This document shows, piece after piece, positions 1 through 27,700 of a stretch of DNA of 64,000 nucleotides; within the stretch, counting starts at the first letter, position 1; each line of letters opens with the position of its first letter. Made by a program: the position numbers and the translations under genes. The stretch is from the IMG/VR virus record IMGVR_UViG_3300044680_000280, positions 62,001 to 126,000 of that record; one strand, written 5' to 3'. Below the pieces are notes generated by a model, which was not told the origin of the DNA, searched no databases, and saw nothing but the letters and a program-made list of their open reading frames with translations.

Positions 1-1961
1 TAGAGGAGTCCGTCCGATGAGCTGGAATCCGTGATCCTTAGGGTACGACCGTACATGGCTCCAGTCTGGGAACCCATGGAAGACCATGTGTAGGGCTGGA
101 ACTGAGTGGGAAGAGTTCGGCCACCGTAACTGAATAGGGGCGACGACTGGTCTGGAAAGAAGCACAACTGAATGACTCGGTTACCGTCATCAATGGCCGC
201 CATTACTGAGTTCGGCGAAATCCCATGGGTGAAGGTTCGAAGTTGCACAGAAACGTCGAGGACGACGTCCGAGGAGATCGACAAAAGTGGTTCGATGCGG
301 TCATACCCTCGGAAATCTCCGCCTATGAGTCCGACTTGGCTCTCAACGCTTGTTGTCGTAGCGCTCGTCGAATCGATAATCAGAGACTTAGCAAGAGCGG
401 TTGAGAGGAGAGTTTCCGTGCCCGCGTACCCTATGGGCGTCCACGGTTGAGACGCCGCCTCTGGGGTGGTCGTACCCTCATAGCTCACGAAGACAGATGG
501 TGCTGTCTGAAGAGGGTTCGTCGGAATGATGTCGTACTTGACGAAATCCCATAGAGAGGTGTTGACCGACTCATAGGACATCGACCCAAAGAAAACGCCC
601 TGGAGCTGATTGAACGGTGCCGTGAGCTCCTCAAGTGCAGGGAGTTGGCTCTCCAGAACTTGAAGCGTAGGCGTAACGTCTCCATCCAGGTAAACAGAGA
701 TGTTTCCTGACGGATCCCGAAAGAGTCGGTAGCTGTGGATAACGGTCCAGTCCAACGTAGCGGGGGAGCCCGTTGGACTTCCGTTTGAAATTCCCCCACT
801 CCAAGCTGTAATAACCGACGGGTCATTTCCACCCCCCGATACGAGGAGTCCAATCTGATTGACACCCCCGCTCGTAAGGTACCCGAGAACAATGGCTTTG
901 GATGAATCCGAGTAACCCGCCGCAATGCCCGTGAAAACTCCTTCAGTTGTCGTAGCGATCGTGATGTAATTTCGCCATGTAGCTGCAAAGACATGCTGAA
1001 AAGTGAGATCGACTTGACGCGTCCAAAATAGCACCCGCCCATTTGGAAAGGGACCAGCCACAGTCTTCGTGACAGTCAGAAGGCTGTTGGCGATAGACGT
1101 TGTGCCCGTACCTGTTCGATCCCACGGGGCAATCGGATCGTTTTCGGGAAGGGCCGTCGCCCCGTAAGAAACGAAGGTCGAGGTCACTTCCCTTGAAAGG
1201 GGCGGGTATGCGATCTTGTGAAGGGGTGAATTCAGAACAAGAAGGTTCGGATCGTTCAAAACCGCAGTGTACGCCCGCTCGTAGGCACGGTACTTGAGAT
1301 CTCTTTGTTGAGGCTGAGGAAGAGTCGATTGGGAATTGCTCGGAACGTAATTGCTGGGGACGATGAGCTGATTGTTGTAGCGGTATTTGTGACCTGTACC
1401 GTCATCGGCATATCCCACGTCACGGTTCCAGGAATTCAAGCGAAACGCAGGACTATTCAACGAGCGAAAATCAACCGTAGGGTTCTCAATCCAAGAATAG
1501 GAGACTTTGACATCATCTCCCGGGTTTGGGGGATTCGTCAGAATGATCTGTCCAAGAAGCCCGTTCACCTGTTCTGGGATAACCTGAACGTTGTTGATGA
1601 GAACCGTGACATCATCGGCTCTCTCGGCAATTTGCCCGTTACGTGGGTCAAAAACCTCCCAGGAGATGTCAGTATTGTCTGGGTCCGGAAGGTAGAAGCA
1701 TGACACGAGCTTGACAGCCGTCGTGCTCAAAATCGTTGCAATGCGGTACGTGCCCGCATTAACGTTCGTCCCACTCAGAGTAACGTAGAGCCCGAGCATG
1801 GACGGGGTGATGAGGCCGCCGGGCAGCACAACCGTAACTGGGTCCAGAATGGTTGCCCCCGATCCGCTCGCCAGGGTAAGCGGAGGTCTTGATATTGGCC
1901 CATGATCGACGAAAATCGACCTAGAGGTTATAGCCGGGGTTGTTGTGACCGCGAAACTCAT
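1..1961 (-). CDS. Large virion structural protein, partial (runs off the window start; >650 aa; absent from the ORF track)
   Basis: ATG at 1961 overlaps the TGA of the 2706-aa gene (ATGA). Manual translation MSFAVTTTPAITSRSIFVDHGPISRPP... stays open to position 1. It has three spaced motifs (FVSYGATALPENDPIAPW, FVSYEGTTTPEAASQPW, FSYGGRTLPTQFQPYTW) suggesting repeated beta-sandwich domains. Confidence 0.85.
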   Translation of the reverse strand, partial: MSFAVTTTPAITSRSIFVDHGPISRPPLTLASGSGATILDPVTVVLPGGLITPSMLGLYVTLSGTNVNAGTYRIATILSTTAVKLVSCFYLPDPDNTDISWEVFDPRNGQIAERADDVTVLINNVQVIPEQVNGLLGQIILTNPPNPGDDVKVSYSWIENPTVDFRSLNSPAFRLNSWNRDVGYADDGTGHKYRYNNQLIVPSNYVPSNSQSTLPQPQQRDLKYRAYERAYTAVLNDPNLLVLNSPLHKIAYPPLSREVTSTFVSYGATALPENDPIAPWDRTGTGTTSIANSLLTVTKTVAGPFPNGRVLFWTRQVDLTFQHVFAATWRNYITIATTTEGVFTGIAAGYSDSSKAIVLGYLTSGGVNQIGLLVSGGGNDPSVITAWSGGISNGSPTGSPATLDWTVIHSYRLFRDPSGNISVYLDGDVTPTLQVLESQLPALEELTAPFNQLQGVFFGSMSYESVNTSLWDFVKYDIIPTNPLQTAPSVFVSYEGTTTPEAASQPWTPIGYAGTETLLSTALAKSLIIDSTSATTTSVESQVGLIGGDFRGYDRIEPLLSISSDVVLDVSVQLRTFTHGISPNSVMAAIDDGNRVIQLCFFPDQSSPLFSYGGRTLPTQFQPYTWSSMGSQTGAMYGRTLRITDSSSSDGLL

Positions 1962-4900
1962 TGATTTGTCACATAATTTCTGGATATGTCTTTGGGACCA
2001 CCAATTTCTGTATCGAAGACCGTGGCGAATCCTGTGACGGTTGACGTGCCATACACTGTTCCCATTAGATTAGAAACGAATTCGACGTTCCCGGTGACGT
2101 CACAGGAACCGTCCGACTCTCCTGCGGCATCGATGGGGATAGCGTAGTCGGCAACGCACTCGGAGTTCGACGTAATGTTGGCACCGACTCCAATTGTGGT
2201 CGTTGCGGACGCGATGATCGTAGAGTTGGCATCGATTGTGGACGTATCGTGACCGTGGACGAAGATCGTGAGGGAATCACTGGTCGAAACCGCATCCGAA
2301 AGGGTCTCGCGATGATTGACGTTAATCGCATAGCTATTGGGCACGCACACGGAGTTGGCGGTGACCGTCGAGGAGACATTGAGAGTCTTAGTACCGTTTG
2401 CAGTGATCGAGGAGTTGGCCGTGACGGTCGCGGTGTCTGTCTTATAGTTGGCACCGATATTGGCTGTAACTGTAGAGTTTGCCGTAATGGCCGATTGACC
2501 GGTTACATTGGTAATAGCTTCAACCGTGAGAGTGGCGTATGCCTCAATGTTGACGTAGCCCGCCGCCTGCTGGTAGATGACATTTCCACCAACGATACAC
2601 CCGGACTCGGAGAAGCCCTGTCCGAATACGGCTCCACCAAGGAGGCCCGTAAGGTAAGAGGTACCGTAGCCAGCCGAGGCAATGCTTTGAACGACCTGTT
2701 CTCTGACCCCAGTGGTCGAAAGACCCGTAACTGCCCCAGAAATGTGATTTGCATATTCCGCATTTCCAGTAATGGTACCGACACCATCGGCTTCACATGG
2801 ATTGTCCCCGTAATACTGATTGCCAGGACCCATTATGGCCGTGGCCATGCCGGTAATAGAACCCGCAATATGGTTGTCAAACTCCGCGTCGCCGGACACG
2901 GTCGCGAACCCGTCCACCGTATTGAGGCTGGGAGCCCAGATCTTCCTGATACCACCATAGAGCTGACCGGTAGCGCCAGAGACGTCGGCTCCCGCATAAA
3001 CCCTGTCGAGGGTCAGAGTTGTGTCGTTCTGGATGGATTCAATGAGATAGTATCCCGATCCGCCTGGGGCTGTGCCGCCGTAGAATTGAAGTATTTCACT
3101 CGCGTATAGTTGGGTCGTGAAGGAAGTTCCGACTCCAGCAACCACTGCGGTCCCATTCGTTAGCGTAAACGTACCCGTGGCAGTCTCATTGAGATTGCTG
3201 AGTTCGGTTACATTGCAGGAGCCAGACGTCGAACCAGAAATGTGATTCGTGTACTCGACATCACCCGTAAGGGTCGACGAACCGCCAGCACCAATATCCC
3301 CACCATCGACGGGGCTAAGGGCAATGATGAGGCCGATGTTAGCCTCAACGTAGGAAAGACCGTACGTAAGACCCTCAATCCAATTGGCGGGTTCAACGAA
3401 GCCCTGGACATAACACTCACCTCGGCACGTAATACCCTGGTAAAGGGAAGCACCAGTCGAGGTCGTTCCCGTGTAGGACGTGCTCAAGGTGAGAGACGTT
3501 TCACTGGAGATTGACTGGATGTAGTAAGTACCTGTTGCAGCCGGCGAACCCTCTCGGAAAGTTAGGGACTGGCCGATGTACAGGTTCAGGAAACTCGTAC
3601 CGGTTCCAGTAACCGTTGCAGAACCATTCGTCAGGGCAACCGTCCCCTCGAGCTTCTGGAACTGCACCGAGATGAGCATCGTCGAGGCGATGAGGTCGAC
3701 GGTTGCGGTCCCGCTAATCGTTTGGAACGGCGCGTACAATGCAGCAACGTTGTCCGAGTCCGTAAGAGTCTCGAAACTATCCGTGAGGGTCTCGTGAACT
3801 CCTCGACTGACCTTGAGCTTGTCGCTCGTTGTCATCGAATCCGAAGCAGACGGATAGTACTTGGCCGTCGCGGAAGCCGTAGTGGTCGCCGAACCATTGA
3901 GACTCGTGGCCCCAGACGCAACAATCACGGTAACCAGGGAGTCCTTGGTGGTCACCGTGTCAGAGACGTTCGCATTCAAAACAACAATCGAACCCGCCTG
4001 ATCCGAAATTGCAATCGTGTCGGAAACCGACTGATGTAGTTCAGCATTGACGTTAGCCGTGACACTAGAGTCAGCCAAAACGGACGAGGTTCCCGTAGCA
4101 TTGATATAGTTCGTCAGGGAGTCGGACGTGGTGGCCGTGTCGGAAACCCCCTCCACCACCGTATGAACAACGGCAAGGGAGTCGGAAACTGTAAAGTCAT
4201 CGGAGACATTTTCGAAGTAGTTCGAGTTCTGACGGGCCGTGAGGGACGAGTCGGCGGTGATCGATGCATTCGCCGTAAAATTGGCGTCCGTCTGAATGGA
4301 GTCACTGATCGAAACAGAATCGGAGAGGTTTTCGTAGATGACAATGACAGCGGTTAGAGAATCCGTGACTGTAATCGTATCCGACGCGTGAATCTCATCG
4401 TCAGCAAGCGGAGATGCCGTGACCGAGGCACTTGCATTTAGAGATGCGGTAACCTCAAAAGATGCCGACGTGTTAAGGCTATCCGTAGGGGTAATCGTAT
4501 CGGACAGTTGCTCGTTAACAACGATGACGGCGACGAGCGAGTCGCTGATCGTAATGGTGTCAGAGAGTCGAGCCTCATCCTCGTCCGTAGCATTTGCTGT
4601 AACCGAGGAACTCGCGGAGAGGGAAGCGTCCGTTCCAAAAGATGCCGAGCTCGAAAGGGAGTCAGAATAGGCGACCGAGTCAGAAAGATTCTCGTAGGCG
4701 ACTATGACTGAACTGAAGGAATCGCTGATTGTAATAGTATCGGAAATGGGCTCGATGTGGTCAGCCGTAATAGCGGCTACGAAGGAGTCCGAGCCGTCAA
4801 GCATCGCTGAGGCTTCGTAAGATGATGTGCCAGTCAAAGAGTCGCTGATCGAGATTGTGTCGGAGATGTTTTGGGTGATGACACTCAGGACTGTCAGGGA

Positions 4901-7900
4901 GTCGGACGTGGTGACCGTATCCGAAAGGCTCTCGCGGAGGTTGGCGGTAGCGCTGGCCGTAACGGTGGAATCCCCATTAATCGAAGACGAGGCAGTGAAG
5001 TTTGCATCCGTGTATAGATAATCAGAGGATGTAATCGTGTCCGACAGAGTCTCATGGAGCACGACGATGGCCGAAGCGGTGTCGGTAATCGAGATTGAAT
5101 CGGAGATATCGACTTCCTCGTACGCATTGGAACTTGCCGTCACCGAAGACGTGCCATTGAGGGAGGCGGCTACAGTGAAGTTCGCATCCGCTGTGAGGGA
5201 ATCGGAGCACCCGATTGTGTCGGACAAGGACTCGTGGAATACAACGATTCCGGTCGCCGAGTCCGTGATCGTGATGACGTCGGATAGATAAACATAGTCA
5301 TCCGCCGTAACGTTTGCTGTCAGGGACGATGAACCGTCGAGGGTCGCGGATGCCGTGAAGCTGGCGTCTGCTGTTAGGCTATCCGAAGTGGTGACCGAAT
5401 CCGAAACGCTCTCATGAAGAACGACGATTCCGGTAACCGAGTCCGTGATCGTGACGGTGTCCGAGAGGTGGATTTCATCGTCTCCCGTTACCGAAGCGGA
5501 CAAGGACGCGGAGCCGTCCAGGGTAGCAGTCGCATGAACGTCGGCACTGGTCTGTAGGAAGTCCGTAAGAGAAATGGTGTCCGACAGGCTTTCGGTAAAG
5601 ACAACAACCGAGCTGACGGAATCCGTGATTGAGATCGTATCGGAGAGGTGAAGTTCGTCCTCTCCAGTGGCATTAGCCGTGACCGAGGAGTCAGCGGAGA
5701 TGGTCGACACCACGAAGTAGGCGGCGTCGGTCTGAAGGGAGTCTGTATAGCTAACCGAGTCCGACAGGTTCTCATTGATTACGATGACCGCGGTTAGGGA
5801 GTCACTGATAGAGATCGTATCGGATAGGTGAAGCTCATCGTCTGCCGTCACGCTCGCGGTGAGCGTAGAACTGGCCGAAATGGCCGAGGCTGCCTCGAAA
5901 GACGCAAAACTGGTAAGAGAGTCCTCGTACGTCGTTGTGTCAGAGACGCTAACAGTAAGAACCACCTGAGCGGTCAGAGAATCGCTACTAGTAATCGAAT
6001 CGGAAATAGTGATGATATGATCGGCTGTGATAGCGGCTACGAAGGAGTCGGAACCATCGAGCATCGCCGAGGCTTCGTAATCCGCAGTGCTCGTCAAGGA
6101 GTCACTGATTGAGACCGAGTCCGACACGCTAACAGTAAGAACCACCTGAGCGGTCAGAGAATCGTAGATGCTGATTGTGTCAGAAACTGACGTGGGGTAA
6201 TTCGAATTCGACCGAGCCGTGATAGACGAGTCCCCATCTATCGATGCGGAGACCGCATGGTTAGCGCTTGTACTGAGGAAGTCCGAAGTGCTGATCGAGT
6301 CAGATAGTGCTTCGTAGGCAACAACGATTGCGGAGACGGAGTCCGTGGCCGAAATCGTGTCCGAGAGGTGGAGTTCATCATCTGCCGTCGCGGCGGCCGT
6401 AAGAGAGGAGCTTCCGTTGAGGTTCGAATGCGCCGTGAAGTTGGCGTCCGTTTGAATCGAATCGGCATAGGTAATCGTATCCGAGGGACTCTCGTACACA
6501 ACGATGACCGCGGTCAGAGAATCGGAGATGCTGATTGTATCAGTGACAGACCCGCTATCGTGAGCCGTAATACTAGCGGAAACCGATGAAGTTCCGTCGA
6601 TGGTCGAGGTTCCCGTATGACTGGCTACGGCCTGAAGAGAATCGGTCGAAGTGATCGTATCCGAGATGTTGGCTTGGATGACGACAACCGCAGTCAGGAT
6701 GTCACTGACCGTAATGGTGTCCGAAAGCGTCTCGACGTGCGAGGCCGTGACGCTAGCAGAAACCGAGGCGTCGGCGTCGATGGTTGAGGTTGCAGTGAAG
6801 TTGGCGTCAGTTTCCAGGGTGTCGGAATAGGTGACAGTGTCCGAAACGTTTGCGTGGACGATGATAACTGACGTTACCGAGTCAGAAATAGACACGGAGT
6901 CAGATACGGAGGCGGCATCGTGGGCTGTGATGCTGGCCGAAACCGAGGAACTCGCCGTGAGGGACGCTTGAACCTGATGGTTCGCATCCGTCTGGAGGGA
7001 ATCCGAAATGGTGACCGTATCGGAAACGTTCTTGTAGATCGTGAGGGTCGTCGACAGGGAGTCCGATATGGTGACAGTATCGGAAAGGCTCTCAACGTGA
7101 TCAGCGGTGATCGCCGCCAAGAGGGAGTCGGTTCCGTCTATGACCGCGAACGCCTGGTAGCTCGCATCCGTGGTCAGAGAATCGGTACAGGTAATCGTAT
7201 CCGAGAGAGAAGGTATACCCGAGAGAACAACGGAAAGTGAATCCGAGAAGGTGACAGTGTCTGAGACAGGGTTTAGGTAATTGGAGTTGCTTCGAGCTGA
7301 GCAGGTCGAGTTCGCCGTCAGTGAGGCGGCCACTTCCCTTATGGCAATGGCAGAGGCCGTGTCTGAGTACGTGATCGTATCTGAAACGTTCGCATTGAGG
7401 ACGACGGTTGCGGTAACCGAGTCCGTGGCACTGACCGTATCAGACAAACTTGCCTTATGCTGAGCAAGGGCCGAAGCGGATACGGATGCAGAACCGCTCA
7501 AACTCGAGGCGGCCGTATGATTGGCGTATGCGGTGAGAGAATCCGTATAGGTAACCGTGTCCGAAACGCTTCGATGAACCGTGGTTATGCACGTGACCGA
7601 ATCAGTAGTCGAGATCGTGTCACTGAGAGATATGACTCGATTCGCTTGAGCCGATAGGGAGTCCGTGGCCGAAATCGTATCGGAAAGGGATTGGATATGA
7701 TTCGCGTCAATGGAAAGAGAATCGGTGACCGAAACCGTGTCGGAGACGCTTACCGACAACACAATGATTGAGGACAGAGAGTCCGAAATTGAGATCGTGT
7801 CTGATAGACTCGGATTGTGTTGCGCGAGAGCTGAAGCCGTGAAAGACGAGCTGGCGGATAGAGAGGAAGCAGCGACCTTATTCGGATGGGCCGTAACAGA

Positions 7901-10078
7901 ATCAGTGCACGTAAGGGTGTCAGCAAGTGGAATACTGTTATTCCTGCCGACTGCCAAGGAATCGGATACCGCAATTGTGTCACTGACCGAGATATGGTGA
8001 CCAGCAGAGGGCGAAAGAGAGTCAGAAATTGTAATCGAGTCGGACGTGCTGATAGCTCCGTACGTCCGTTGTTTCTGAAGTGGTTGTCGACGTCTCGGAA
8101 GCTTTGCGTAGTAGGGAACGGGCGGGTCGGCGCCCTGAGTGGCCGTGTTCGCTGATGTGTTGATATTCGCCGTGGTGGCGGTGGTGCCCGTATAAGGTTG
8201 GGCTAGAGTGAGCTGACCATTTCCCATTGTGTAACCACTATTCGTGGGAACAGTGGTCGTCATGGTCATGGAGGTGGAACTGTTAATTGATGATATCGTA
8301 TACGTGCCAGTTGCCGTCTCGCTCTCATAGTATAGAGTTACGGTTTGACCTGGGAATAGGTGAGTAAAATCCCCAGTATCAACTGCCCCTACGCCCCCGA
8401 CGGTGTTGCTTGCGGTGAGCGTTGTGGTGCCATTCGCATTTATACCGCAACTGCAATTGTAAATGGCTGCAATCGTGTACAACGGAGAAACGGTAACACC
8501 CACGGGACCCAATGGGGTAACGGACACTCCTGAGGTGTTCGCCGAACTGGTGTAATTCGTTGTTAGAGTCAACGAAGTGGTACTAGAGATGCTCTGAATG
8601 ACATAGGTGCCAGATGCGGTAGGGGAGCCCCCGCTAAAAGTTATCGATTGACCCGCAGCAAGATTCGTTGTAAAGCTGGTACTGGTACCAGTAACGGTTG
8701 CAGAACCATTAGTGAGGGCGACCGTACCTGGAATAGTGGATGGGGACCCTTGGTATGGGGTCGTCAAAGTCAGTGCGGTGTTACTCGAAATGGAAGCGAT
8801 GGTGTAAATACCGACCGATAGTAAGGCTCCAATTGTCGTTGCCGAGGCATAGTTCGTTGTTAGTGTCAGAGACGTTGTACTCGCAATAGCCGCGATAACG
8901 TAGGTGCCGGATGCGGTTGACGAGCTACCAGACGAGGCGCCACCACTGAACGTAACCGTCTGTCCTACAACCAAGGTAGTTGTAAAACTAGTGCCAGAGC
9001 CTGTTACTGTAGCCGATCCATTGGTAACAGTGACAGTACCTCCAATGGTACCTGGACCAGTAGAGAAGGAAATGGGTTGCCCGACAGCAAGCAGGGTTGA
9101 AAAACTAGTGCTCGTACCTGTAACTGTCGTTGAGCCATAAGTGAGTGCGGCAGTGCCGGCTATACTAGATTGAGAGGAAAAGGATACGATTTGCCCAGGG
9201 TACAACTGGTTCAAGTAGTTGTAGTTCCACGACAGAATCGTGGTTGGTGCCGTCGGAGTGACCGTGGTTGAACCGTTTGTAACCGAGTTCTGAAGACTTA
9301 CAATTGAGAACCCCGACCCGTTCCCCAAAAGGGTGTACGTAGCGCTAGTTCCAGCAAATGGCCTTAATGCAAATTCAACATTGTAGAAGTTCGGGGCTTG
9401 GTTGTTGAGGTCTGTTTCTCTAGTAAATGGCCAGTATCCGTAAAGGGTATTCAGATTGTCATATGTGGGGGAGAGTTGCTCGGACTCCCTTTCAATGGCC
9501 GCAATCGGCAGAGCCTCCAGCCACATTTTCAGACCAGATATCGAACCTATGAAGGTGTTCTGGAATGTGTTTGTGTACGTGTAGGCGCCGTAGTTGTAAT
9601 TGATACCCAGGCAAAATGTCTGCCCGAGCACTTGTGGGATAGTGGTGTTAGTGTAGTAACTGAGTGAGCTAGTAGGTGTGCCCACAGCCTTCGCAAAAAT
9701 GGTGACAACCGTAGAGGCCGTGTAGGCACTCATCGTCATTCCGACGAAGTACCATTGGTTGTTCTGTAGGGAGACAGTGGATCCGCTTGTAGTGACAACC
9801 GTAGAGGTAGGATCTCCCACCGCTAGAGTGAGCAGACCGGGGGACCCCGCTGCACCCGCGGAACCTTCAATAACTAGAGCGATAGTAGAGCCGCTGGCCG
9901 TCGAGGCCATCTGAAACAAGTAGGCATACGGGGCCCCGCTGCCGTTGTTGTTCAACGACTGAAAGTGCTGCATGTTGATAAACATGCAGATGGTGAAGCC
10001 GTAACCGTTCGAAGAAATGAGCGCGGGAGAGGGGGTCGCTACGAGACCGCCGGCACCTCCTGATAGGTATAAGGACAC
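1958..10078 (-). CDS. Giant fibre/adhesin-like virion protein (2706 aa): N-terminal LamG/ConA-like domain, nested TNGS modules, long Ser/Asp/Thr repeat stalk
   Basis: LamG-type motifs (QWYFVGMT...FIGSISGLKMW...LYGYWP), seven TNGS modules and ~1,400 aa of SDTITISDSL-type repeats; lies in the fibre gene cluster. Confidence 0.75.
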   Translation of the reverse strand: MSLYLSGGAGGLVATPSPALISSNGYGFTICMFINMQHFQSLNNNGSGAPYAYLFQMASTASGSTIALVIEGSAGAAGSPGLLTLAVGDPTSTVVTTSGSTVSLQNNQWYFVGMTMSAYTASTVVTIFAKAVGTPTSSLSYYTNTTIPQVLGQTFCLGINYNYGAYTYTNTFQNTFIGSISGLKMWLEALPIAAIERESEQLSPTYDNLNTLYGYWPFTRETDLNNQAPNFYNVEFALRPFAGTSATYTLLGNGSGFSIVSLQNSVTNGSTTVTPTAPTTILSWNYNYLNQLYPGQIVSFSSQSSIAGTAALTYGSTTVTGTSTSFSTLLAVGQPISFSTGPGTIGGTVTVTNGSATVTGSGTSFTTTLVVGQTVTFSGGASSGSSSTASGTYVIAAIASTTSLTLTTNYASATTIGALLSVGIYTIASISSNTALTLTTPYQGSPSTIPGTVALTNGSATVTGTSTSFTTNLAAGQSITFSGGSPTASGTYVIQSISSTTSLTLTTNYTSSANTSGVSVTPLGPVGVTVSPLYTIAAIYNCSCGINANGTTTLTASNTVGGVGAVDTGDFTHLFPGQTVTLYYESETATGTYTISSINSSTSMTMTTTVPTNSGYTMGNGQLTLAQPYTGTTATTANINTSANTATQGADPPVPYYAKLPRRRQPLQKQRTYGAISTSDSITISDSLSPSAGHHISVSDTIAVSDSLAVGRNNSIPLADTLTCTDSVTAHPNKVAASSLSASSSFTASALAQHNPSLSDTISISDSLSSIIVLSVSVSDTVSVTDSLSIDANHIQSLSDTISATDSLSAQANRVISLSDTISTTDSVTCITTVHRSVSDTVTYTDSLTAYANHTAASSLSGSASVSASALAQHKASLSDTVSATDSVTATVVLNANVSDTITYSDTASAIAIREVAASLTANSTCSARSNSNYLNPVSDTVTFSDSLSVVLSGIPSLSDTITCTDSLTTDASYQAFAVIDGTDSLLAAITADHVESLSDTVTISDSLSTTLTIYKNVSDTVTISDSLQTDANHQVQASLTASSSVSASITAHDAASVSDSVSISDSVTSVIIVHANVSDTVTYSDTLETDANFTATSTIDADASVSASVTASHVETLSDTITVSDILTAVVVIQANISDTITSTDSLQAVASHTGTSTIDGTSSVSASITAHDSGSVTDTISISDSLTAVIVVYESPSDTITYADSIQTDANFTAHSNLNGSSSLTAAATADDELHLSDTISATDSVSAIVVAYEALSDSISTSDFLSTSANHAVSASIDGDSSITARSNSNYPTSVSDTISIYDSLTAQVVLTVSVSDSVSISDSLTSTADYEASAMLDGSDSFVAAITADHIITISDSITSSDSLTAQVVLTVSVSDTTTYEDSLTSFASFEAASAISASSTLTASVTADDELHLSDTISISDSLTAVIVINENLSDSVSYTDSLQTDAAYFVVSTISADSSVTANATGEDELHLSDTISITDSVSSVVVFTESLSDTISLTDFLQTSADVHATATLDGSASLSASVTGDDEIHLSDTVTITDSVTGIVVLHESVSDSVTTSDSLTADASFTASATLDGSSSLTANVTADDYVYLSDVITITDSATGIVVFHESLSDTIGCSDSLTADANFTVAASLNGTSSVTASSNAYEEVDISDSISITDTASAIVVLHETLSDTITSSDYLYTDANFTASSSINGDSTVTASATANLRESLSDTVTTSDSLTVLSVITQNISDTISISDSLTGTSSYEASAMLDGSDSFVAAITADHIEPISDTITISDSFSSVIVAYENLSDSVAYSDSLSSSASFGTDASLSASSSVTANATDEDEARLSDTITISDSLVAVIVVNEQLSDTITPTDSLNTSASFEVTASLNASASVTASPLADDEIHASDTITVTDSLTAVIVIYENLSDSVSISDSIQTDANFTANASITADSSLTARQNSNYFENVSDDFTVSDSLAVVHTVVEGVSDTATTSDSLTNYINATGTSSVLADSSVTANVNAELHQSVSDTIAISDQAGSIVVLNANVSDTVTTKDSLVTVIVASGATSLNGSATTTASATAKYYPSASDSMTTSDKLKVSRGVHETLTDSFETLTDSDNVAALYAPFQTISGTATVDLIASTMLISVQFQKLEGTVALTNGSATVTGTGTSFLNLYIGQSLTFREGSPAATGTYYIQSISSETSLTLSTSYTGTTSTGASLYQGITCRGECYVQGFVEPANWIEGLTYGLSYVEANIGLIIALSPVDGGDIGAGGSSTLTGDVEYTNHISGSTSGSCNVTELSNLNETATGTFTLTNGTAVVAGVGTSFTTQLYASEILQFYGGTAPGGSGYYLIESIQNDTTLTLDRVYAGADVSGATGQLYGGIRKIWAPSLNTVDGFATVSGDAEFDNHIAGSITGMATAIMGPGNQYYGDNPCEADGVGTITGNAEYANHISGAVTGLSTTGVREQVVQSIASAGYGTSYLTGLLGGAVFGQGFSESGCIVGGNVIYQQAAGYVNIEAYATLTVEAITNVTGQSAITANSTVTANIGANYKTDTATVTANSSITANGTKTLNVSSTVTANSVCVPNSYAINVNHRETLSDAVSTSDSLTIFVHGHDTSTIDANSTIIASATTTIGVGANITSNSECVADYAIPIDAAGESDGSCDVTGNVEFVSNLMGTVYGTSTVTGFATVFDTEIGGPKDISRNYVTNQ
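3745..8055 (-). repeat. Coding tandem repeat: ~20-aa units arranged in a 60-aa (180-nt) super-repeat
   Basis: Two SDxxxxSDSL units alternate with one LxGSSSxxA unit. A 39-nt identical DNA stretch occurs at 5946-5984 and 6126-6164, exactly 180 nt apart. Confidence 0.9.
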
Positions 10079-10098: not shown

Positions 10099-11904
10099 TT
10101 ATGCAACCTGACGCTTGATGCCTTGCCACGTGTGACCAAAGGCCGGGGTCTCCAAGTACAAAGACGTCGTAGTCGAAGTCGTTCCCGTGTAATTGGACGC
10201 CAAGGTCAACGAGGTGCCGCTTCCAATTGCTGAAATGGTGTACGGGACTCCGGGCTGAGAAGCAAAGGAGATGACTTGCCCAACGGTAAGTTGTAGAAAG
10301 CTCGACGTAGCAGTTGTAACTGTCGCGGACCCGTTCGTCACATTGACGTTAGTCAGGCTGTCAAATGCACTAGTCAGTAGGGCGACTCCGCTTCGGTTCT
10401 CAACGATGATGACTATGTGATCGGGAAGGGAACCACTGAAAGCGGACGCGACACTGAAGGGGGAGCTAAACTTGCTGACGTACCCTGTTAGGGTCGTACC
10501 GGTACTTGTTGCTCCAGTATAGGGAGAGGTCATCGTCAGAGTGGGATTGCCCGTCAAAGTCACTGACCCCGAGCCAGAGTTATTTGCATTAGTAGTTAGC
10601 GTTAGCGAAGTATTGCTGGTGATCGTCGCAATGACATATGTGCCCGTCGGAGGAGTGGTTCCACCTGAAAATGTAACTGCCTGGCCAGGAACGAACTGGG
10701 TCAAAAAGCTTGTGGAGGTTCCCGTAACGGTTGAAGAACCGCTCGTAGTGGCGACTGTACCACTACCCGTAACGCTGCTACCAATGGCCAAAACCATGTA
10801 TGGGACACCGGCTTGACTCGCGAGAGTTATGGTTTCACCCACAGCAGCAGTAAAGGCCGTCGCGCTAGAGAGGACGGAGTATCCGTTCGTAGCATAAACC
10901 GTTGTGCTTCCACCTGGAGCCGTGGCAGCGGACGTGCCGACGTTCATTGTACCTATGAGTCGGGCATTCGGAGGAGATGTCAAGGTCACAGGAGCGGAAA
11001 CCCCGGTTACCTCTTCACCGTAAGTCAATCCGCCGTCCGATGTGCCCGTCGCGTATACGTTAATGATCGACGGTGCGACAGGAGTTGTATTCGTGGTGGC
11101 TTTGACTTGGACGAAAATGTCCTCGAACTCATTGAGAAATGAGTACATAGACAGTGAGTTTGAAGTCGTGCCTGAGTAAGTGGTGGTCAGACTCAAGGAG
11201 TACGCACTTGCGATAGAAGCTATCGTGTAGGTAGTCCCCAGAGACCCTGCAAACTGTACAACCTGATTGACGTACAAGGTGGAGTTGAAATACGTTCCTC
11301 CGTTGGTGTACAAGGTGGCGCTCGACGACGTCGCACCACTGTAAAAACCCGTCAGAGTGAGAGTCGTATTGGTAATACTGGAGATCGTGTAATTCACCCC
11401 GGGTTGCGAGCTGAAACTGATCAATTGACCGATGCTCAACGGAAGGTAGGTGAAGCTGGCCCCAGACGTCCCCGTGCCCGTATAGTTCGTGGTTAGGGTC
11501 AAGGAGGTGTTGTTTGTGATCGACCCAATGACGTAGGTCCCCGTTGCCGTACCACCACCGAACGTGATCATCTGACCCACGGACAACTGAGTCAGGAAGC
11601 TCGTGCTAGACCCTGTCACGGTTGCAGAGGCGTTCGTGACAGTTACGGTCCCCGTTCCTGTGTATCCCGTAAGGCTCGTGGTGACGCTCGTCGAACCATT
11701 CGTCACCGTCACCGTGCCAGAAATGGAAGCCATCGAGACGGCCGTCGAACCATTCGTCACCGAGACAGATCCAGGAAGCAGAACTATCCCGTTCGCCGTG
11801 TTGTCGATGTACGAAGAGGCTGTCGCGGACGTTGAGCCCAGGTTCGCCAGAGCCATCGGCAAGGGCTGAGCCGGTGCCGCGTAATTGGACGAAACTATGC
11901 TCAT
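10099..11904 (-). CDS. Virion/fibre-associated protein (601 aa): small core inflated by six TNGS modules; paralog of 13015-15333
   Basis: Shares core segments with the 772-aa ORF (SATASSYIDNTAN, FEDIxVQ, DGGxTYGE, PPNARL, LPDHIV, ENRSG, HTWQG). Confidence 0.75.
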   Translation of the reverse strand: MSIVSSNYAAPAQPLPMALANLGSTSATASSYIDNTANGIVLLPGSVSVTNGSTAVSMASISGTVTVTNGSTSVTTSLTGYTGTGTVTVTNASATVTGSSTSFLTQLSVGQMITFGGGTATGTYVIGSITNNTSLTLTTNYTGTGTSGASFTYLPLSIGQLISFSSQPGVNYTISSITNTTLTLTGFYSGATSSSATLYTNGGTYFNSTLYVNQVVQFAGSLGTTYTIASIASAYSLSLTTTYSGTTSNSLSMYSFLNEFEDIFVQVKATTNTTPVAPSIINVYATGTSDGGLTYGEEVTGVSAPVTLTSPPNARLIGTMNVGTSAATAPGGSTTVYATNGYSVLSSATAFTAAVGETITLASQAGVPYMVLAIGSSVTGSGTVATTSGSSTVTGTSTSFLTQFVPGQAVTFSGGTTPPTGTYVIATITSNTSLTLTTNANNSGSGSVTLTGNPTLTMTSPYTGATSTGTTLTGYVSKFSSPFSVASAFSGSLPDHIVIIVENRSGVALLTSAFDSLTNVNVTNGSATVTTATSSFLQLTVGQVISFASQPGVPYTISAIGSGTSLTLASNYTGTTSTTTSLYLETPAFGHTWQGIKRQVA

Positions 11905-13014: not shown

Positions 13015-15333
13015 TTAGGCCACCACCTTCTGCGTAACGTCGATAGACCAGTGGATCGTCGTCGACGCCAAACCCGTAACCGAGATTTGCAAGGTGTTCG
13101 TGCTGAGAGCGACCGAGGAGTTCATAGAGCTACCTGAACCGTTCGTGAGGATATTGTAGGCCGCGGGAGTCGAAGGGTTCAGAGTGGCGGCGGAGGACCC
13201 CGCTCGTTGAACCAGGAACTCGTAGTCGGCGCTATAGAGGTCTCCCGCTCCGCCCGTGTCTACCCCTAGAACGTTGACAATGAAGCGACTGGCGGAGCTT
13301 GCAGCCATCGCAATCGACACGGCCGTCGTGGACGTGGAGTTTGTGGTCGTCTGGGAGTAGATGATCGAGTTGACGGGATTTGTACCGCTAGAGTTCAGGA
13401 CCGTCTCGGTTGCCGTGATGGGAATCGAAGAGGCGCCGCTGATCGAATTGACCGTTCCAGTAACTGACCCGGGTCCCGTTGCCGTGACGTCTCCCGTAAT
13501 GGCCGTGATGGCCGAGGTGGAACTCGATTCCAATGGGTCGACGAATTGGCGTTTGGTGCCTTGCCATGTGTGCGTGAATGCCTCGATGTAAATAGAAGCA
13601 GTCGAAGCCCCGGCACCCGTATAGTTCGTGGTCAAAGTCAACGAGGTCCCACTAACCGAGGAAACGGTATAGGGAACTCCCAACTGGGAGCTGAACGAGA
13701 TCATTTGACCGGGGGTCAGGAAGGAGGCCAGAGTCGCGCTCGCCGTGACAAGGTTCGTTCCTGGAGTTAGAGCCGCGGTCGGGGTGATCGCCGTATTGAA
13801 AAGAGTCTGTCCGCTCCTGTTTTCGGCAATGAGGACAATATGGTCAGGGAGAGTTCCCCCATATGCCGCTGCAATGCTGAAAGGAAGACTGAATTTGTTG
13901 ACGTAAGCGGTAAGAGCTCCCGTGGTCGTAGTCGTACCCGTGAAGGGGGTGTTCAAAACGAACGTCGGTTGACCTGTCATGGTCGCTGAGCCCGTCCCAA
14001 CCCCAGTAGCCGTGTTGATAGTCAGAGAGGTATTACTGGCGATGGCCGTAATGACGTACGGCACGGTACCAGTCAGGTAGGTAGACTGGATGACTACCTG
14101 TCCAACAGAGAAGGTGGTCGTAAACGTCGTGCCAGACCCCGTCACCGTCGTGGTGCCGTTGAATGTTACCGTAGCCGAGGATTGAGTCGTGGCCGGTATC
14201 GCGATGATCGTGTACGGGACTCCCACCTGACCCGTGCTGAACGTCACCGTCATTCCAACTAGCAAGCTAGAAATGGTGGTAGACGTGCCAGAAACAATGG
14301 AGGAACCGTTCGTAGCGGTAAGAGTGGAACCACCAATGTTGGACGATGGAGCGGCCGTAGTACCTAGATTGATGATTCCAACGAGTCTAGCGTTTGGCGG
14401 GGCCGTCAAAGTAACTGGACCTGAAACCCCGTTAACCTGCTCACCGTACGTGGTACCGCCATCGGTCGACCCCGTGGCGTAAATGTTTAGGATAGCTGGA
14501 GCTGTTGGAGTGCTGGAAACCGTAACCCTAAACTGAACCAGAATGTCCTCGAACTGATTGAGCAACGAGTACATTTGGAGTCCGCCCGCTGTCATTGTCG
14601 CGTTTACCGACGTCGTGGATCCCGTGTAAACGGATCCAAGGGTGAGGGACGTAGAGCTTTGAATCGAAGAAATGTAGTACGTACCCGAAGCCGTCGGAGT
14701 ACCGCCACTGAACGTGACGTACTGACCCGCGTAGAAGCTTGTAAAACCGGTTCCCGTAACCGTAACGGACCCGTTCGTAAGGGCAACGGATGCCGTAGCC
14801 CCCGTCGAGTTCCCCGTGTAGTTGCTCGTCAGAGTCATGACATATGGGCTCGTGATCGAGGAGACCACGTACGACGTACCCAACGTGCCCGCGAACTGAA
14901 CCGACTGACTCTGGTACAGAGCCGAATTGAAGTACATACCCCCGTTCGTGTACAGGGTTGCGGTCGAGGATGTTGCGCCGCCGTAATTACCCAAGAGAAG
15001 CAACAGAGTGGTGCTAAAAACCTCAAGAATCGTGTAGCTCACACCAGGCTGGGAACTGAAACTAATGACCTGGCCCGCGCTTAAGGGCGTGAAGTTTGCC
15101 GTGCCCGCCGTAACGATCTGCGATCCCTGGGTCACCGTGACGGTTCCCGAGATTGACGCCATTGTGACGGTTGCGGAACCGTTCGTGAGGAGAACCGTTC
15201 CAGGGAACAATAAAGACCCGTTCGCCGTGTTGTCGATGTAGCTCGACGCCGTGGCCGAGGCACTGGTAAGGCCCGCCAGGGACATACCCAAAAGCTGATT
15301 GGGCGAGGAGTAGATAGGCGAAAGAGTGCTCAT
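13015..15333 (-). CDS. Virion/fibre-associated protein (772 aa): paralog of the 601-aa protein with six TNGS modules and a C-terminal domain shared with the 2178-aa fibre
   Basis: Core identity with 10099-11904. The last ~165 aa closely match the C-terminus of 18206-24742. Confidence 0.75.
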   Translation of the reverse strand: MSTLSPIYSSPNQLLGMSLAGLTSASATASSYIDNTANGSLLFPGTVLLTNGSATVTMASISGTVTVTQGSQIVTAGTANFTPLSAGQVISFSSQPGVSYTILEVFSTTLLLLLGNYGGATSSTATLYTNGGMYFNSALYQSQSVQFAGTLGTSYVVSSITSPYVMTLTSNYTGNSTGATASVALTNGSVTVTGTGFTSFYAGQYVTFSGGTPTASGTYYISSIQSSTSLTLGSVYTGSTTSVNATMTAGGLQMYSLLNQFEDILVQFRVTVSSTPTAPAILNIYATGSTDGGTTYGEQVNGVSGPVTLTAPPNARLVGIINLGTTAAPSSNIGGSTLTATNGSSIVSGTSTTISSLLVGMTVTFSTGQVGVPYTIIAIPATTQSSATVTFNGTTTVTGSGTTFTTTFSVGQVVIQSTYLTGTVPYVITAIASNTSLTINTATGVGTGSATMTGQPTFVLNTPFTGTTTTTGALTAYVNKFSLPFSIAAAYGGTLPDHIVLIAENRSGQTLFNTAITPTAALTPGTNLVTASATLASFLTPGQMISFSSQLGVPYTVSSVSGTSLTLTTNYTGAGASTASIYIEAFTHTWQGTKRQFVDPLESSSTSAITAITGDVTATGPGSVTGTVNSISGASSIPITATETVLNSSGTNPVNSIIYSQTTTNSTSTTAVSIAMAASSASRFIVNVLGVDTGGAGDLYSADYEFLVQRAGSSAATLNPSTPAAYNILTNGSGSSMNSSVALSTNTLQISVTGLASTTIHWSIDVTQKVVA

Positions 15334-24769: not shown

Positions 24770-27700
24770 TCAACTTGTGGCAGTACGGTAGGTGATCGTG
24801 AAGTCCCCTTGTGTGATGTACTCAACGGCAGCCGCCGTGATATCGTGGGAACCGGTATCACCTCGTATGATGTACGTGCATGTATACGCATGATTCGTCG
24901 GAATATCGGGTGGTGTACCCGCCGATGATAGGGAAATGACCACGTGGTTAGCCGTAAGGACGAGTTGCTGAGCGGCGATTTGTGCGGGCGTCGTATAACC
25001 CTGAGCAATGAGGGTAGCCGAGTCGGAATATCCAGTAATGCTGGCACCTTCCGCCCCTATAATCCAACCCTGAGACGGACCGCTCGCCACCGTGGCAAGC
25101 GACGTCGCTGGAGTCATTTGCACGTCGTCTTGGAAGACTCCGTGGGTTTCAGTAGCCAATCCCCCACCGTCAGTTGTTGGGTACTCCAAAGCGCCCGTAA
25201 GAATGTATGCGTTATTGCCCCCGATATTAAGTGAGGGAACCGCCTGGTATGCCGAGTTCACGGTCTCTCGAAGCTTGATCGAACCATCGGCGTAACCCAT
25301 GAGGGCGAAAGGTAGGACATTGAAGTCCACACCCGTCGTATCATTGATGGCGGCGTCTATGTTTGATTGAGCGACGCCCTGACCGATGAGCTTCTGATTC
25401 AGAATGAGAGAGGTGTTCGTACGAATAAGTGGGTCCACGGTCGACTGCACCGCGCCCGAATCGAGCTGAACCGTAGTCTCCAGGTTCACATCATTCTCAA
25501 TTGTCTGCTTGACAAGAACGTCCGCCGTAACGTGCCTTTGGGTATTCACGACGGCTTGGAGCTGCTGGAGGAGATCGTTGATGACGTACGTGACCACGAA
25601 GTTTTCATCGTGGACGTAGTCGACGCTAACCGTCTGCCCACTAACAATGTTCGAAGTCGCTGTTCGCACGAGCTTTGCGGGCGTCGTTGCCGTTCCCTGA
25701 ACGATATCGTAATCAGGAGCCGAGGAGCCTGGTCCATTGTACTCAGTCGTACGATCCGCAGAGTACACGGCAATCGTATCCGTGTTGATTCCTATGCTCT
25801 CTAGGGGTTCGTTGAAGAACCCAATGAGAACATGGACTTCATTGTTCACCGTAATGGTCGCTCCCGACGGGATTCCCTGATACTGAATGATCGAAATGTT
25901 GTCCGTGGAGATGGTAGATTCCCCAACGAGGAGAGGATCCGCGCTCTTGTCGAAAACGATATTGTTTGTGGGGGACAAGGGTCCAGAAACTTCTCCAACG
26001 ACAGAAACGACTCGAATGACTGGCTGAAAACTGAACGTAAAAACGTTCGCCACTTGAAATCGGTAACTAGCTTCAATGACGTCATCAATGTGCGTTGTCG
26101 GCTGGTCCGGAAGAGCGGGGTTCAGCGTGAACGTCTCATAGTCGACAAGGGTCAACCCCGTGAGATCGTAACTCAACCCCTGCGTAACGTTGAATACACT
26201 CAGAACTTGGATAATAGGCGTTGACGGTGTGACCCTTGAGTCCAAAGCTCGCAGTGTGAGCGTCGCAAGATTGATAATAGAGGCATCGATCCCACTGGCA
26301 ATCGTATACGTAAAGGCAAAAGTCTCAGAGATCGTACGCTCAAGCGTGCCTTGAACCCAAATGTCGACTTTGCCACCAATGTGCTTCATACGGACAGGGT
26401 CATAGTCGCGCATCATGAGGGGATCGCCACTCTTGACAACGAGGGCTTTCACTATGCCTACCTGGGACGAAGCCGTACGCTCGTAACCACCCTCAGTGCC
26501 CGTATCAACAGAGACGAACCCTAGGATGGCCCTAGCCGCGAGCTGGGAGTTTGTCTCGACGTCGGTCCCAAAGACCGTTGCAGCATCGTTTGTGACCAGA
26601 ACACCCGAGACGCCCGAAATTTGCGTAATGGAACCCGCGGGAAGGTTTCCGATGCTCCCTGTCTGTTCACAAACGATGTCAACCGTAATTTGGTAGCGCT
26701 TCTCATCGAAGTTGTAATACGCTTGCGCATTCGCAGCAGGGAGAGTGTACGCGCCCGCAATAAGGAACCGTACGGCCGTCGTGTTGGTGCTCGAATTAGC
26801 CGGAGCCGTCACATAGGAATTGGCAGGAATGTCAATGTCTTGAATGGGGGCGGTCAGAGTGTAAATGACTACCTGTCCAGTCGCGGCATTGCCGGGAAGC
26901 CGTGTCTTGTCCTCGTTCCCAGCGAGCTTGTCGAACTGGGTATCGATGAGGCTTTGCACTGCCGCCGTGGACTGAAACCCGAGAGCCGCCATAAGGGCGG
27001 TCTTGTAGGGGCTTGAGCTGACTGGGTCAGAAGTCCCCGTATTGTTCGCATCGTCGATCTGAATTAAGGTTAGGAAACTCTGGGATCTGTGGACGAAATC
27101 CAACACGAACCAAAGGCGCTCCCCTTCCGAGGCAAATGGGTCAATGGATACGTCTCGGGTCGTTGAACCCGGAATCATGGCCACATTGGCGTTGACCGTT
27201 TGAACCTGAGTGATGTAGGAAGTGGTGATGTCGGCAGCAACTCGGCCTGGAAGGTCCGTAATCGCCGTATCGATGGTTAGCGGCGTTCCGAGAACTTCCT
27301 GAGAATACGGGGTCTCAATTTCCTGGTGGAGAGCGCTGTCGTAGAAAACAGCGGTAACAACGTAGTAAAGTGGGTCCGTTGCGGCCACACTGACGAACTG
27401 CTCCGAATTGATGATTCCAGTACCGCCCGCACGATTGTGGGTGAATACGATGAACTCGTTCATGTGGTAGCTCTGAAAGGTGTCCGTGAAGGACAGCTTC
27501 TCAGCGAGGTTCGCTACCTGATACGAATTGTCGTATCTTACGGCTAAGATTTGACCGAAGTCATTCTCCTCCGTAACGCGGATTCGAACGTTCTGAAGGA
27601 TGGTATTGTCCCAAATAGCCGTGTCATTGGCGGACGTAATGATATCCTTTTCGTACGTCGTCGGCGTCAGAACAGGCGAAGCGTTGACCTTGTAATACCC

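What the first reader, a model, noticed from the sequence alone, without database searches (positions are those of the whole stretch)
8150..9295. Russian-doll nesting: five modules inserted within one another in the 2706-aa protein
Seen: the sequence parses only as nested brackets. Outer SVTNGS...PGQIVSFSSQ [ GTAALTYGS...GQPISFSTGPG [ GTVTVTNGS...TLTTNY ] GIYTIASISSNTALTLTTPYQG [ GTVALTNGS...TLTTNY ] ] LYTIAAIY [ INANGTTTL...SMTMTT ] QLTLAQPYTG. At least three different loops of the module act as acceptor sites, and the whole cluster lies at the end of the LamG region. Inference: a branched, tree-like domain architecture rather than beads on a string.
Basis: seen in the sequence. Interest (0 to 1): 0.75.

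Follow-up and report, generated by a model that had tools for sequence, protein, structure and literature searches.

The report
Barrel domains nested inside each other
A giant tail-fibre protein of an uncultivated 400-kb peat phage carries five copies of one small beta-barrel domain inserted into each other's loops, a rare architecture previously documented mainly in cyanobacterial RNA polymerase.

Summary
In the 2706-aa ORF (window 1958..10078, minus strand), aa 264-631 (window 8186..9289) parse as A1 [A2 [M3] B2, M4] B1a [M5] B1b. An HMM trained only on uninterrupted copies outside this region returns exactly those partial coordinates. Joining the flanks in silico restores end-to-end matches: M2 54.7 bits, and M1 28.9 bits against 0 of 2000 controls.

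The partial modules abut their neighbours with only 0-10 residues between them. That leaves no room for "degenerate tandem copies".

The two neighbouring fibre genes (601 aa and 772 aa) hold further nests, one in a third loop. As paralogs they also give a natural filled-site/empty-site pair, a 72-aa indel.

At least 12 of 150 database relatives show the half/whole/half unit. AlphaFold2 on that unit of this protein gives pLDDT 85, with both split halves at 86-97. The full five-module model left the split halves at low confidence, and no coordinates or PAE were available.

The module is the small barrel at the N-terminus of phage side fibres (PHROG 1980, pyocin PyoF13); its fold resembles FCCH and OB barrels.

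Verdict: recursive same-domain insertion. This is a new variant of a known kind, the precedent being RNA polymerase Si3.

The parts
1958..10078 (-). 2706-aa tail-fibre-like ORF. Layout: N-terminal concanavalin/LamG-like region, five-module nest, about 24 x 60-aa repeat shaft, two free modules, C-terminal region.
   Evidence: PHROG 1980 'tail fiber protein' E 3.9e-25; Baseplate_J/PHROG 6 gene upstream at 24770..28246
9314..10078 (-). aa 1-255, possible LamG/concanavalin-like domain
   Evidence: ESM-atlas neighbours are Laminin_G_3 clusters, 0.98; no Pfam hit
9170..9289 (-). A1: N-part (b1, b2, long helix region, b3) of the outermost host module M1, aa 264-303
   Evidence: hmm 5-34, 13.5-17.6 bits
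9056..9157 (-). A2: N-part (b1-b3) of host module M2, aa 308-341
   Evidence: hmm 1-35, 34-41 bits; pLDDT 87-95 in AF2 model 2
8813..9040 (-). M3: complete guest module including its sixth strand, aa 347-422, sitting in the b3/b4 loop of M2
   Evidence: hmm 1-58, 65 bits; pLDDT >90 in both models; VIA Z about 7 to Uba1 FCCH and T5 pb9 barrels over model residues 36-119
8747..8812 (-). B2: C-part (b4, b5) of host module M2, aa 423-444
   Evidence: hmm 38-59, 20.5 bits; pLDDT 86-97
8513..8728 (-). M4: complete guest module with sixth strand, aa 451-522. It lies inside the b3/b4 loop of M1, after M2.
   Evidence: hmm 1-58, 80.4 bits; pLDDT >90
8459..8482 (-). B1a: strand b4 of host module M1, aa 533-540
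   Evidence: hmm 36-46, weak alone; significant only in the rejoined construct
8252..8443 (-). M5: complete but divergent guest module, aa 546-609, in the b4/b5 loop of M1
   Evidence: hmm 1-56, 29.4 bits; pLDDT 77-89
8186..8215 (-). B1b: strand b5 of host module M1, aa 622-631
   Evidence: hmm 48-59, weak alone; rejoined M1 28.9 bits, 0/2000 controls
3467..3646 (-). free contiguous module, aa 2145-2204
2990..3175 (-). free contiguous module, aa 2302-2363
11143..11772 (-). 601-aa neighbour gene, aa 45-254: three-level nest through the b2/helix loop (b1b2 [ b1b2 [ full ] helix-b6 ] helix-b6)
   Evidence: rejoined halves give hmm 1-55 at 38.2 and 32.6 bits with an HMM built from database copies only
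10480..10914 (-). 601-aa gene, aa 331-475: full module inserted in the b4/b5 loop of a host module
   Evidence: rejoined hmm 2-55, 21.9 bits
14788..15201 (-). 772-aa paralog, aa 45-182: the same b2/helix-loop nest but one level shallower (the empty site for the innermost 601-aa guest)
   Evidence: rejoined hmm 1-55, 36.1 bits
13903..14334 (-). 772-aa gene, aa 334-477: module inserted in the b4/b5 loop of a host module
   Evidence: the rejoin test did not extend over b5 here

Best explanation
The region is a product of recursive same-domain insertion. The unit is a 60-70-aa six-stranded beta-barrel (b1, b2, short helix, b3, b4, b5, b6). This is the small barrel found at the N-terminus of many phage side tail fibres.

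Complete copies of the barrel have been inserted in frame into surface loops of other copies:
- M3 sits in the b3/b4 loop of M2.
- M2 (with M3) and M4 sit in the b3/b4 loop of M1.
- M5 sits in the b4/b5 loop of M1.

Each guest folds by itself. Because the start and end of a guest lie close together, the two pieces of the host can still close into one barrel around the insertion point. The result is a compact, branched cluster of five barrels that hangs off the fibre between the LamG-like head and the repeat shaft, rather than five beads in a row.

Shown:
- The sequence parse and its complementarity.
- The lack of space for alternative readings.
- A natural filled/empty-site pair in the neighbouring paralogs.
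- Conservation of the half/whole/half unit elsewhere.
- Purifying selection on the copies.
- A confident AlphaFold2 model of one host-guest pair.

Inferred:
- 3D closure of the outermost host.
- Function. By analogy with pyocin PyoF13, whose N-terminal barrel docks the side fibre onto the central fibre, the cluster most likely serves as a multivalent docking or adhesion hub in the tail-fibre apparatus of this megaphage.
For: 1. Parse. An HMM trained on contiguous copies outside the nest returns complementary partial coordinates in bracket order. Rejoined M2 matches hmm 1-59 (54.7 bits) and rejoined M1 matches hmm 5-59 (28.9 bits, 0/2000 controls).

2. Spacing. There are 4-5 residues between A1/A2 and A2/M3, 0 between M3 and B2, and 10 between M4 and B1a. 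No hidden half-modules fit.

3. Neighbouring genes. The 601-aa and 772-aa genes repeat the phenomenon at the b2/helix and b4/b5 loops. Their rejoined halves match an HMM built from database sequences only, end to end. Their alignment shows a 72-aa indel equal to one guest module.

4. Database relatives. 12 of 150 have N[1-~32] F C[~35-57] units with inserts of 69-79 aa. 19 such units align over their whole length at 31-48% identity. P0139 has three b4/b5 nests.

5. Structure prediction. AF2 of aa 306-448 with that alignment gives mean pLDDT 85.2 and pTM 0.66. The outer N-half scores 87-95 and the outer C-half 86-97. The split copy has the same E-E-H-E...E-E order as the contiguous copy.

6. 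Selection. Copies are old and constrained: pS 0.64-0.93 (saturated) versus pN 0.16-0.39.

7. Module identity.
- PHROG 1980 tail fibre, E 3.9e-25.
- PDB 23gd_B, E 5e-10, and PyoF13 25ve_A, E 6e-8.
- PyoF13's domain anchors the side fibre (PMC13455828).
- Fold hits to the Uba1 FCCH barrel (Z 7.4, rmsd 2.5 A) and T5 pb9 (Z 6.0).
- BFVD hits to the N-termini of T1-like tail fibres.
Against: - No coordinates or PAE were available, so contact between the split halves is inferred from pLDDT and secondary structure only.
- In the five-module AF2 model the split halves A1, A2, B2 and B1 have pLDDT 37-56.
- The split-chain test of A1 against B1a[M5]B1b returned 'no answer'.
- B1a and B1b are not significant on their own (-2.7 and -0.6 bits).
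- The HMM cannot tell which N-half pairs with which C-half: cross-pairings score equally. Nested rather than crossed pairing therefore rests on homology of A2[M3]B2 to stand-alone composite units and on the paralog indel.
- No orthologue with an uninterrupted M1 was found.
- Function is by analogy only.
Confidence: 0.78

Rival explanations
1. Beads on a string with decay. The partial matches are tandem modules whose other halves have diverged beyond recognition, so the domains are sequential and not nested.
For: Outer pieces are more divergent than inner ones (33-60% versus 65-80% identity). B1a and B1b are insignificant on their own.
Against: - Partial modules abut their neighbours with 0-10 residues, whereas a missing half would need 22-35.
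- The end coordinate of each N-part complements the start coordinate of a later C-part in 18 cases across the data set.
- Rejoined pieces match end to end.
Confidence: 0.04
2. The pieces do complement each other, but not in the nested, same-chain way. Either the pairing is crossed (A1 with B2, A2 with B1), or the halves are exchanged between the three chains of a trimeric fibre.
For: The HMM scores crossed constructs as well as nested ones (A2+B1 54.1 bits, A1+B2 34.8 bits). Tail fibres are usually trimers. The five-module AF2 model did not resolve the halves.
Against: - A2[M3]B2 is homologous over its whole length to composite units in proteins that have no other half-module available in cis, e.g. 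P0145, P0025, P0046.
- A monomer AF2 model of this unit is confident for both halves.
- In solved structures the module is formed by a single chain (PyoF13, PMC13455828).
- The paralog indel removes exactly one whole guest.
Confidence: 0.13
3. Artefact. The region is a mis-assembly or frameshifted mosaic of repeated module DNA from a metagenome.
For: Metagenomic origin; repeated modules.
Against: - Copies share only about 70% DNA identity, far below what confuses assemblers.
- The ORF is uninterrupted for 2706 codons.
- The same sequence occurs in a second IMG/VR record and in contigs of two Logan assemblies, with no differences, joints or loose ends in the nest.
- The same architecture occurs in unrelated database proteins.
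Confidence: 0.02

Closest known systems
Si3 insertion of cyanobacterial RNA polymerase beta' (sandwich-barrel hybrid motifs nested in one another)
   Same: - Recursive insertion of copies of one small beta domain into loops of other copies.
- Several domains are built from distant sequence segments while others are continuous (PMC10895346).
- Described as up to six-level nesting in a survey of domain insertions (PMC13114784).
   Different: - Different fold (SBHM versus a six-stranded FCCH/OB-like barrel).
- Different protein (an essential enzyme's trigger loop versus a phage fibre).
- Si3 is one ancient, vertically inherited structure. Here nests recur in three adjacent genes, use three loops, differ between paralogs, and the simple composite is scattered over many unrelated proteins.
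N-terminal barrel of phage side tail fibres: PHROG 1980, PDB 25ve F2-pyocin side fibre PyoF13, PDB 23gd_B
   Same: Same sequence family as each module. PyoF13's copy is called OB-like and anchors the side fibre to the central fibre. BFVD hits to T1-like tail-fibre N-termini at 25-35% identity.
   Different: In those proteins the module is single, contiguous and N-terminal. No solved structure contains a nested copy.
FCCH domain of ubiquitin-activating enzyme E1 and FCCH-type decoration domains of siphophage tail tube proteins
   Same: Six-stranded closed barrel. VIA Z 7.0-7.4, rmsd 2.5 A over 73 residues. Atlas neighbours carry PF16190. The phage literature uses this name for exterior tail domains (PMC13576161).
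   Different: No Pfam E1_FCCH sequence match. Z about 7 is within the range of common small-barrel resemblance. There is no link to ubiquitin chemistry.
Ordinary nested domain insertions (A1-B1-C-B2-A2) catalogued in ECOD
   Same: Host sequence interrupted by a guest that is itself a host (PMC13114784).
   Different: Those are mostly between different families. Here host and guest are the same family at every level.

Membership tests
Phage side-fibre N-terminal barrel module (PHROG 1980 N-terminus / PyoF13 N-domain) | Significant sequence match to the family profile | tested here: met
   PHROG 1980 E 3.9e-25 with 4 stretches. Module profile hits PDB 23gd_B residues 3-61 (E 2.3e-6 / 4.9e-10) and 25ve_A residues 5-68 (E 0.048 / 6.2e-8).
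Phage side-fibre N-terminal barrel module (PHROG 1980 N-terminus / PyoF13 N-domain) | Small closed beta-barrel fold | tested here: met
   AF2: six strands plus a short helix per copy, pLDDT >90. VIA Z 6-7.4 to T5 pb9, Uba1 FCCH and ATPase N-barrels over model residues 36-119.
Phage side-fibre N-terminal barrel module (PHROG 1980 N-terminus / PyoF13 N-domain) | Anchors a fibre to another tail component | not testable with these tools
   Known only for PyoF13 (PMC13455828). The phage is uncultivated.
Recursive (nested) domain insertion, Si3-like architecture | Host domain sequence interrupted by a complete guest domain, with complementary host pieces on both sides | tested here: met
   HMM coordinates 5-34 | 1-35 | full | 38-59 | full | 36-46 | full | 48-59. 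Same in neighbouring genes and in 12 database proteins.
Recursive (nested) domain insertion, Si3-like architecture | Rejoined host pieces reconstitute a full-length domain | tested here: met
   M2 hmm 1-59, 54.7 bits. M1 hmm 5-59, 28.9 bits, 0/2000 controls.
Recursive (nested) domain insertion, Si3-like architecture | Host pieces form one folded domain in three dimensions | tested here: inconclusive
   M2: both halves pLDDT 86-97 with the expected secondary structure, but no coordinates or PAE. M1: pLDDT 37-47, and the split-chain test gave no answer.
Recursive (nested) domain insertion, Si3-like architecture | A guest is itself a host (depth 2 or more) | tested here: met
   M3 in M2 in M1. 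Inner in middle in outer in the 601-aa protein.
SBHM family (the fold of Si3) | Sandwich-barrel hybrid motif fold or sequence | tested here: not met
   No Pfam match. The listed fold hits are FCCH/OB/ATPase-type six-stranded barrels and phage tail proteins; no RNA polymerase entry is among them.
Pfam E1_FCCH (PF16190) | Sequence match above the gathering threshold | tested here: not met
   No Pfam hit at E <= 0.1 on the whole protein. Only fold-level likeness.
   No Pfam hit at E <= 1. ESM-atlas feature neighbours are Laminin_G_3 clusters (0.98, 153 shared features), which is a lead only.

The most novel reading that the evidence does not exclude
One subtype of the barrel behaves as a copy-and-paste cassette. 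This 'guest' subtype is 65-80% identical across three genes. It is repeatedly inserted into three or four different loops of its own relatives, perhaps by microhomology-mediated recombination that leaves short direct repeats (YTGTGT around the 601-aa guest, T-I-G around M3). On this reading, phage fibres grow branched, fractal-like bouquets of binding domains as a general and still ongoing route to new receptor-binding or fibre-docking valency.
Probability: 0.2. Interest if true: 0.75.

Novelty: new variant of a known kind. Interest (0 to 1): 0.6.

Why it matters
Domain insertion is common, but recursive insertion of a domain into copies of itself has essentially one textbook case, cyanobacterial RNA polymerase Si3.

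This locus offers a second, independent system with several advantages:
- It is evolutionarily active, since paralogs differ by whole guests.
- It uses several acceptor loops.
- It is built from a 60-aa barrel small enough for folding and design experiments.

It shows how fibre proteins can become branched rather than linear. It also warns that domain annotation, repeat finders and structure predictors that assume contiguous domains will misread such proteins. The half/whole/half composite is already widespread and, as far as Pfam and the papers searched here show, undescribed.

Tried and rejected
- AlphaFold2 on all five modules (aa 258-640) with a 141-row fragment alignment: guests confident, split halves pLDDT 37-56. 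Inconclusive.
- Split-chain complex test, A1 versus B1a[M5]B1b: 'no answer', folds under pLDDT 50. Not evidence either way.
- GenBank phage searches, DNA and protein: no match.
- Search for relatives of aa 1-650 among long proteins: only P0001 is relevant.
- Search with aa 1-305 for an orthologue with an uninterrupted M1: nothing.
With the single protein it found only an identical record and one weak hit.
- Tandem Repeats Finder on the gene: nothing.
- PDB sequence search for a solved nested composite: none, only single modules.
- Foldseek of the low-confidence five-module model against PDB: no hit at E <= 0.001.
- P0001's genomic context is not syntenic and gave no further filled/empty pairs.
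- Literature searches for nested insertions in tail fibres found no description of this architecture.
- Rejected readings: decayed tandem copies (no room for them) and assembly artefact (three concordant assemblies).
Full report
**Context**

The window is bases 62001-126000 of a 406,734-bp IMG/VR virus record (classed provirus, 85% complete). Runs from peat metagenomes hold the sequence.

The finding lies in a 2706-aa ORF on the minus strand (window 1958..10078). This ORF sits downstream of a Baseplate_J / baseplate-wedge gene (24770..28246). It matches the PHROG 1980 'tail fiber protein' family through its modules (E 3.9e-25). No Pfam family covers the module.

**The observation**

The repeated unit is about 60-70 aa: strand b1, turn (T-N-G-S), strand b2, a short helix (S-F-x-x-x-L), then b3 (G-Q-x-I-x-F), a variable loop, b4 (G-T-Y-x-I-x-S-I), b5 (T-S-L-T-L-T-T-N-Y) and usually a sixth strand.

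So did an HMM made from 13 contiguous copies, none of them from the nest. With the latter, aa 262-634 read as hmm 5-34 | 1-35 | 1-58 | 38-59 | 1-58 | 36-46 | 1-56 | 48-59. The nest covers aa 264-631 = window 8186..9289.

I removed the inner copies in silico.
- A2+B2 becomes a single end-to-end match (hmm 1-59, 54.7 bits).
- A1+B1a+B1b becomes hmm 5-59 at 28.9 bits.
- A1 followed by random windows of the same protein, or by shuffled B1 residues, averages about 16 bits and never exceeds 25.3 in 2000 trials each.

The HMM cannot decide who pairs with whom, because crossed constructs score alike. That question needs other evidence.

**Why it is not a decayed tandem array**

The pieces touch. There are 4-5 residues between A1 and A2 and between A2 and M3, none between the sixth strand of M3 and B2, and ten between M4 and B1a. 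A hidden half-module would need 22-35 residues.

**Why it is not an artefact**

- Module copies are about 70% identical in DNA.
- Synonymous sites are saturated (pS 0.64-0.93) while non-synonymous change is low (pN 0.16-0.39). The copies are therefore old and under purifying selection.
- An identical 7158-bp stretch exists in a second IMG/VR record.
- Two Logan assemblies carry window 7000-10500 without a single difference, joint or loose end in the nest. They may include the source sample.

**More nests next door**

The two genes upstream (601 aa, window 10099..11904; 772 aa, window 13015..15333) are 58%-identical paralogs full of the same module.

The 601-aa protein has a three-level nest through a different loop, between b2 and the helix: b1b2 [ b1b2 [ full module ] helix-to-b6 ] helix-to-b6. 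The 772-aa protein has the same nest one level shallower.

Their alignment shows a 72-aa gap that equals the innermost guest. This is a natural filled site against an empty site. A second 72-aa gap equals a tandem module in the other protein.

Both proteins also carry a full module between b4 and b5 of a host, as M5 does in the big protein. With an HMM built from database sequences only, the rejoined hosts match end to end (38.2, 32.6 and 36.1 bits for the b2/helix-loop hosts; 21.9 bits for the 601-aa b4/b5 host). The 772-aa b4/b5 host did not extend over b5.

Three acceptor loops are thus documented in the gene cluster. Two are documented in the big protein itself: b3/b4 twice and b4/b5 once. 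A doubled sixth-strand-like motif after M4 hints at a further site. I did not test this.

**Relatives elsewhere**

A phmmer search of the nest region against 1.84 billion representatives found 180 proteins at E <= 0.001. Parsing the best 150 with a 57-position HMM gave the following.
- 12 have one or two units of the form N[1-~32], full module, C[~35-57], with inserts of 69-79 aa.
- With looser thresholds, 23 such units were collected, this genome's included.
- Nineteen of them align over their whole length at 31-48% identity to A2[M3]B2.
- Some host proteins contain no other half-module (for example P0145, P0025). In those the N and C pieces have no alternative partner in the same chain.
- P0139 has three b4/b5-loop nests.
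- Apparent orphan halves are explained by truncated ORFs or by partners too short for the HMM.
- Depth three with five modules was seen only here.
- The closest relative, P0001 (2455 aa, on a 333-kb contig), has simple nests in a different gene neighbourhood.

**Structure**

AlphaFold2 on aa 258-640 with a fragment alignment modelled M3 and M4 at pLDDT >90 and M5 at 77-89. The split halves stayed at 37-56.

AlphaFold2 on aa 306-448 (A2[M3]B2) with the 19-row natural composite alignment gave mean pLDDT 85.2 and pTM 0.66. The outer N-half scored 87-95 and the outer C-half 86-97. The split copy shows the same strand-strand-helix-strand ... strand-strand order as the contiguous one.

The tool returns no coordinates or PAE, so closure of the host barrel is inferred, not seen. 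A split-chain test of A1 against B1a[M5]B1b returned 'no answer' and is not used.

**Fold and family**

- VIA-align places the guest (model residues 36-119) on the Uba1 FCCH barrel (Z 7.0-7.4, rmsd 2.5 A), on T5 pb9 domain B (Z 6.0) and on ATPase N-terminal barrels.
- ESM-atlas neighbours are phage proteins, some annotated E1_FCCH or DUF4815. Several align with 104-118 of the 143 residues, that is, with both barrels.
- BFVD hits are tail fibre, tail tip and minor tail proteins of T1-like and other phages, at 25-35% identity over about 80 columns.
- By sequence, the module profile finds PDB 23gd_B and the F2-pyocin side fibre PyoF13.
- The PyoF13 paper describes that N-terminal domain as OB-like and as the part that docks the side fibre on the central fibre (PMC13455828).
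- Recent phage papers call the same kind of barrel FCCH (PMC13576161).
- No solved structure contains a nested copy.

**Origin**

Guest-type modules form a tight group at 65-80% identity across three genes: M3, M4, the two 601-aa guests, and two free copies. Hosts are only 33-60% identical to them and to each other. This fits repeated copying of one subtype into older, diverging hosts.

The 601-aa guest is flanked by a direct repeat Y-T-G-T-G-T (14 of 18 nt identical). M3 is flanked by T-I-G (8 of 9 nt). These may be footprints of illegitimate recombination from a tandem array. I did not test them against chance.

**Comparison with the known**

Nested domain insertions are catalogued. The one well-known recursive same-fold case is the Si3 insertion of cyanobacterial RNA polymerase: eight SBHMs, four of them built from distant segments (PMC10895346), described as six-level nesting (PMC13114784).

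The present case shares the principle but not the fold, the protein or the evolutionary mode. I found no paper describing nested barrels in phage fibres. That is absence of evidence within the library searched.

**Verdict**

The inner host-guest pair is supported by a confident model. The outermost host rests on sequence complementarity alone.

It is a new variant of a known kind of architecture. Function is inferred by analogy: a multivalent docking or adhesion hub in the fibre apparatus of a megaphage.

Noticed in passing
window ~3780-8055 (-), aa ~675-2100 of the 2706-aa protein: About 24 repeats with a 60-aa period made of 20-aa sub-repeats (S-D-T-I-S-x-S-D-S-L-T...). Protein autocorrelation is 0.44 at lags 60/120/180. 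Tandem Repeats Finder sees nothing at DNA level, so the copies are old. Probably the fibre shaft.
   Followed up: partly
window 11467-11670 (-), 601-aa gene aa 79-146; window 8813-9058 (-), big protein aa 341-422: Guests are flanked by short direct repeats: Y-T-G-T-G-T (14/18 nt) around the 601-aa innermost guest and T-I-G (8/9 nt) around M3. A possible recombination footprint, not tested against chance.
   Followed up: partly
window 8483-8533 (-), aa 516-532: Two consecutive sixth-strand-like motifs (S-G-V-S-V-T-P, then V-G-V-T-V-S-P) follow M4. M4 may sit between b5 and b6 of M2, which would be a fourth acceptor site.
   Followed up: no
database proteins P0002, P0003 (2520 and 2374 aa): These carry two half/whole/half composite units each, together with Pfam domains including PF01364 (Peptidase_C25 from memory, not checked here). 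The composite is therefore not confined to phage fibres.
   Followed up: no
window 9314-10078 (-), aa 1-255: ESM-atlas neighbours are Laminin_G_3 / concanavalin-like clusters of phages (score 0.98). Pfam finds nothing and no sequence homologue of aa 1-305 was found.
   Followed up: partly
whole window: Nearly all large ORFs lie on the minus strand. Several are giant: 2178, 1965, 1176, 1158, 1113 and 1103 aa. Most neighbours of the fibre genes have no Pfam or PHROG match. The genome is a roughly 400-kb megaphage-like record from peat.
   Followed up: no
G000:C1 58070-60043, 145836-148709, 155581-158547, 221979-224645 (outside the window): Four further ORFs of the same genome carry contiguous copies of the module. 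One (221979-224645) also has a collagen-like G-P-P/G-x-x stretch near its N-terminus.
   Followed up: no
L011 (contig of P0001, 333 kb): The closest relative's contig encodes a ribonucleotide reductase with an intein. Next to its nested-module fibre gene lies a protein of more than 3259 aa with Laminin_G_3 and pectate-lyase-like domains.
   Followed up: no
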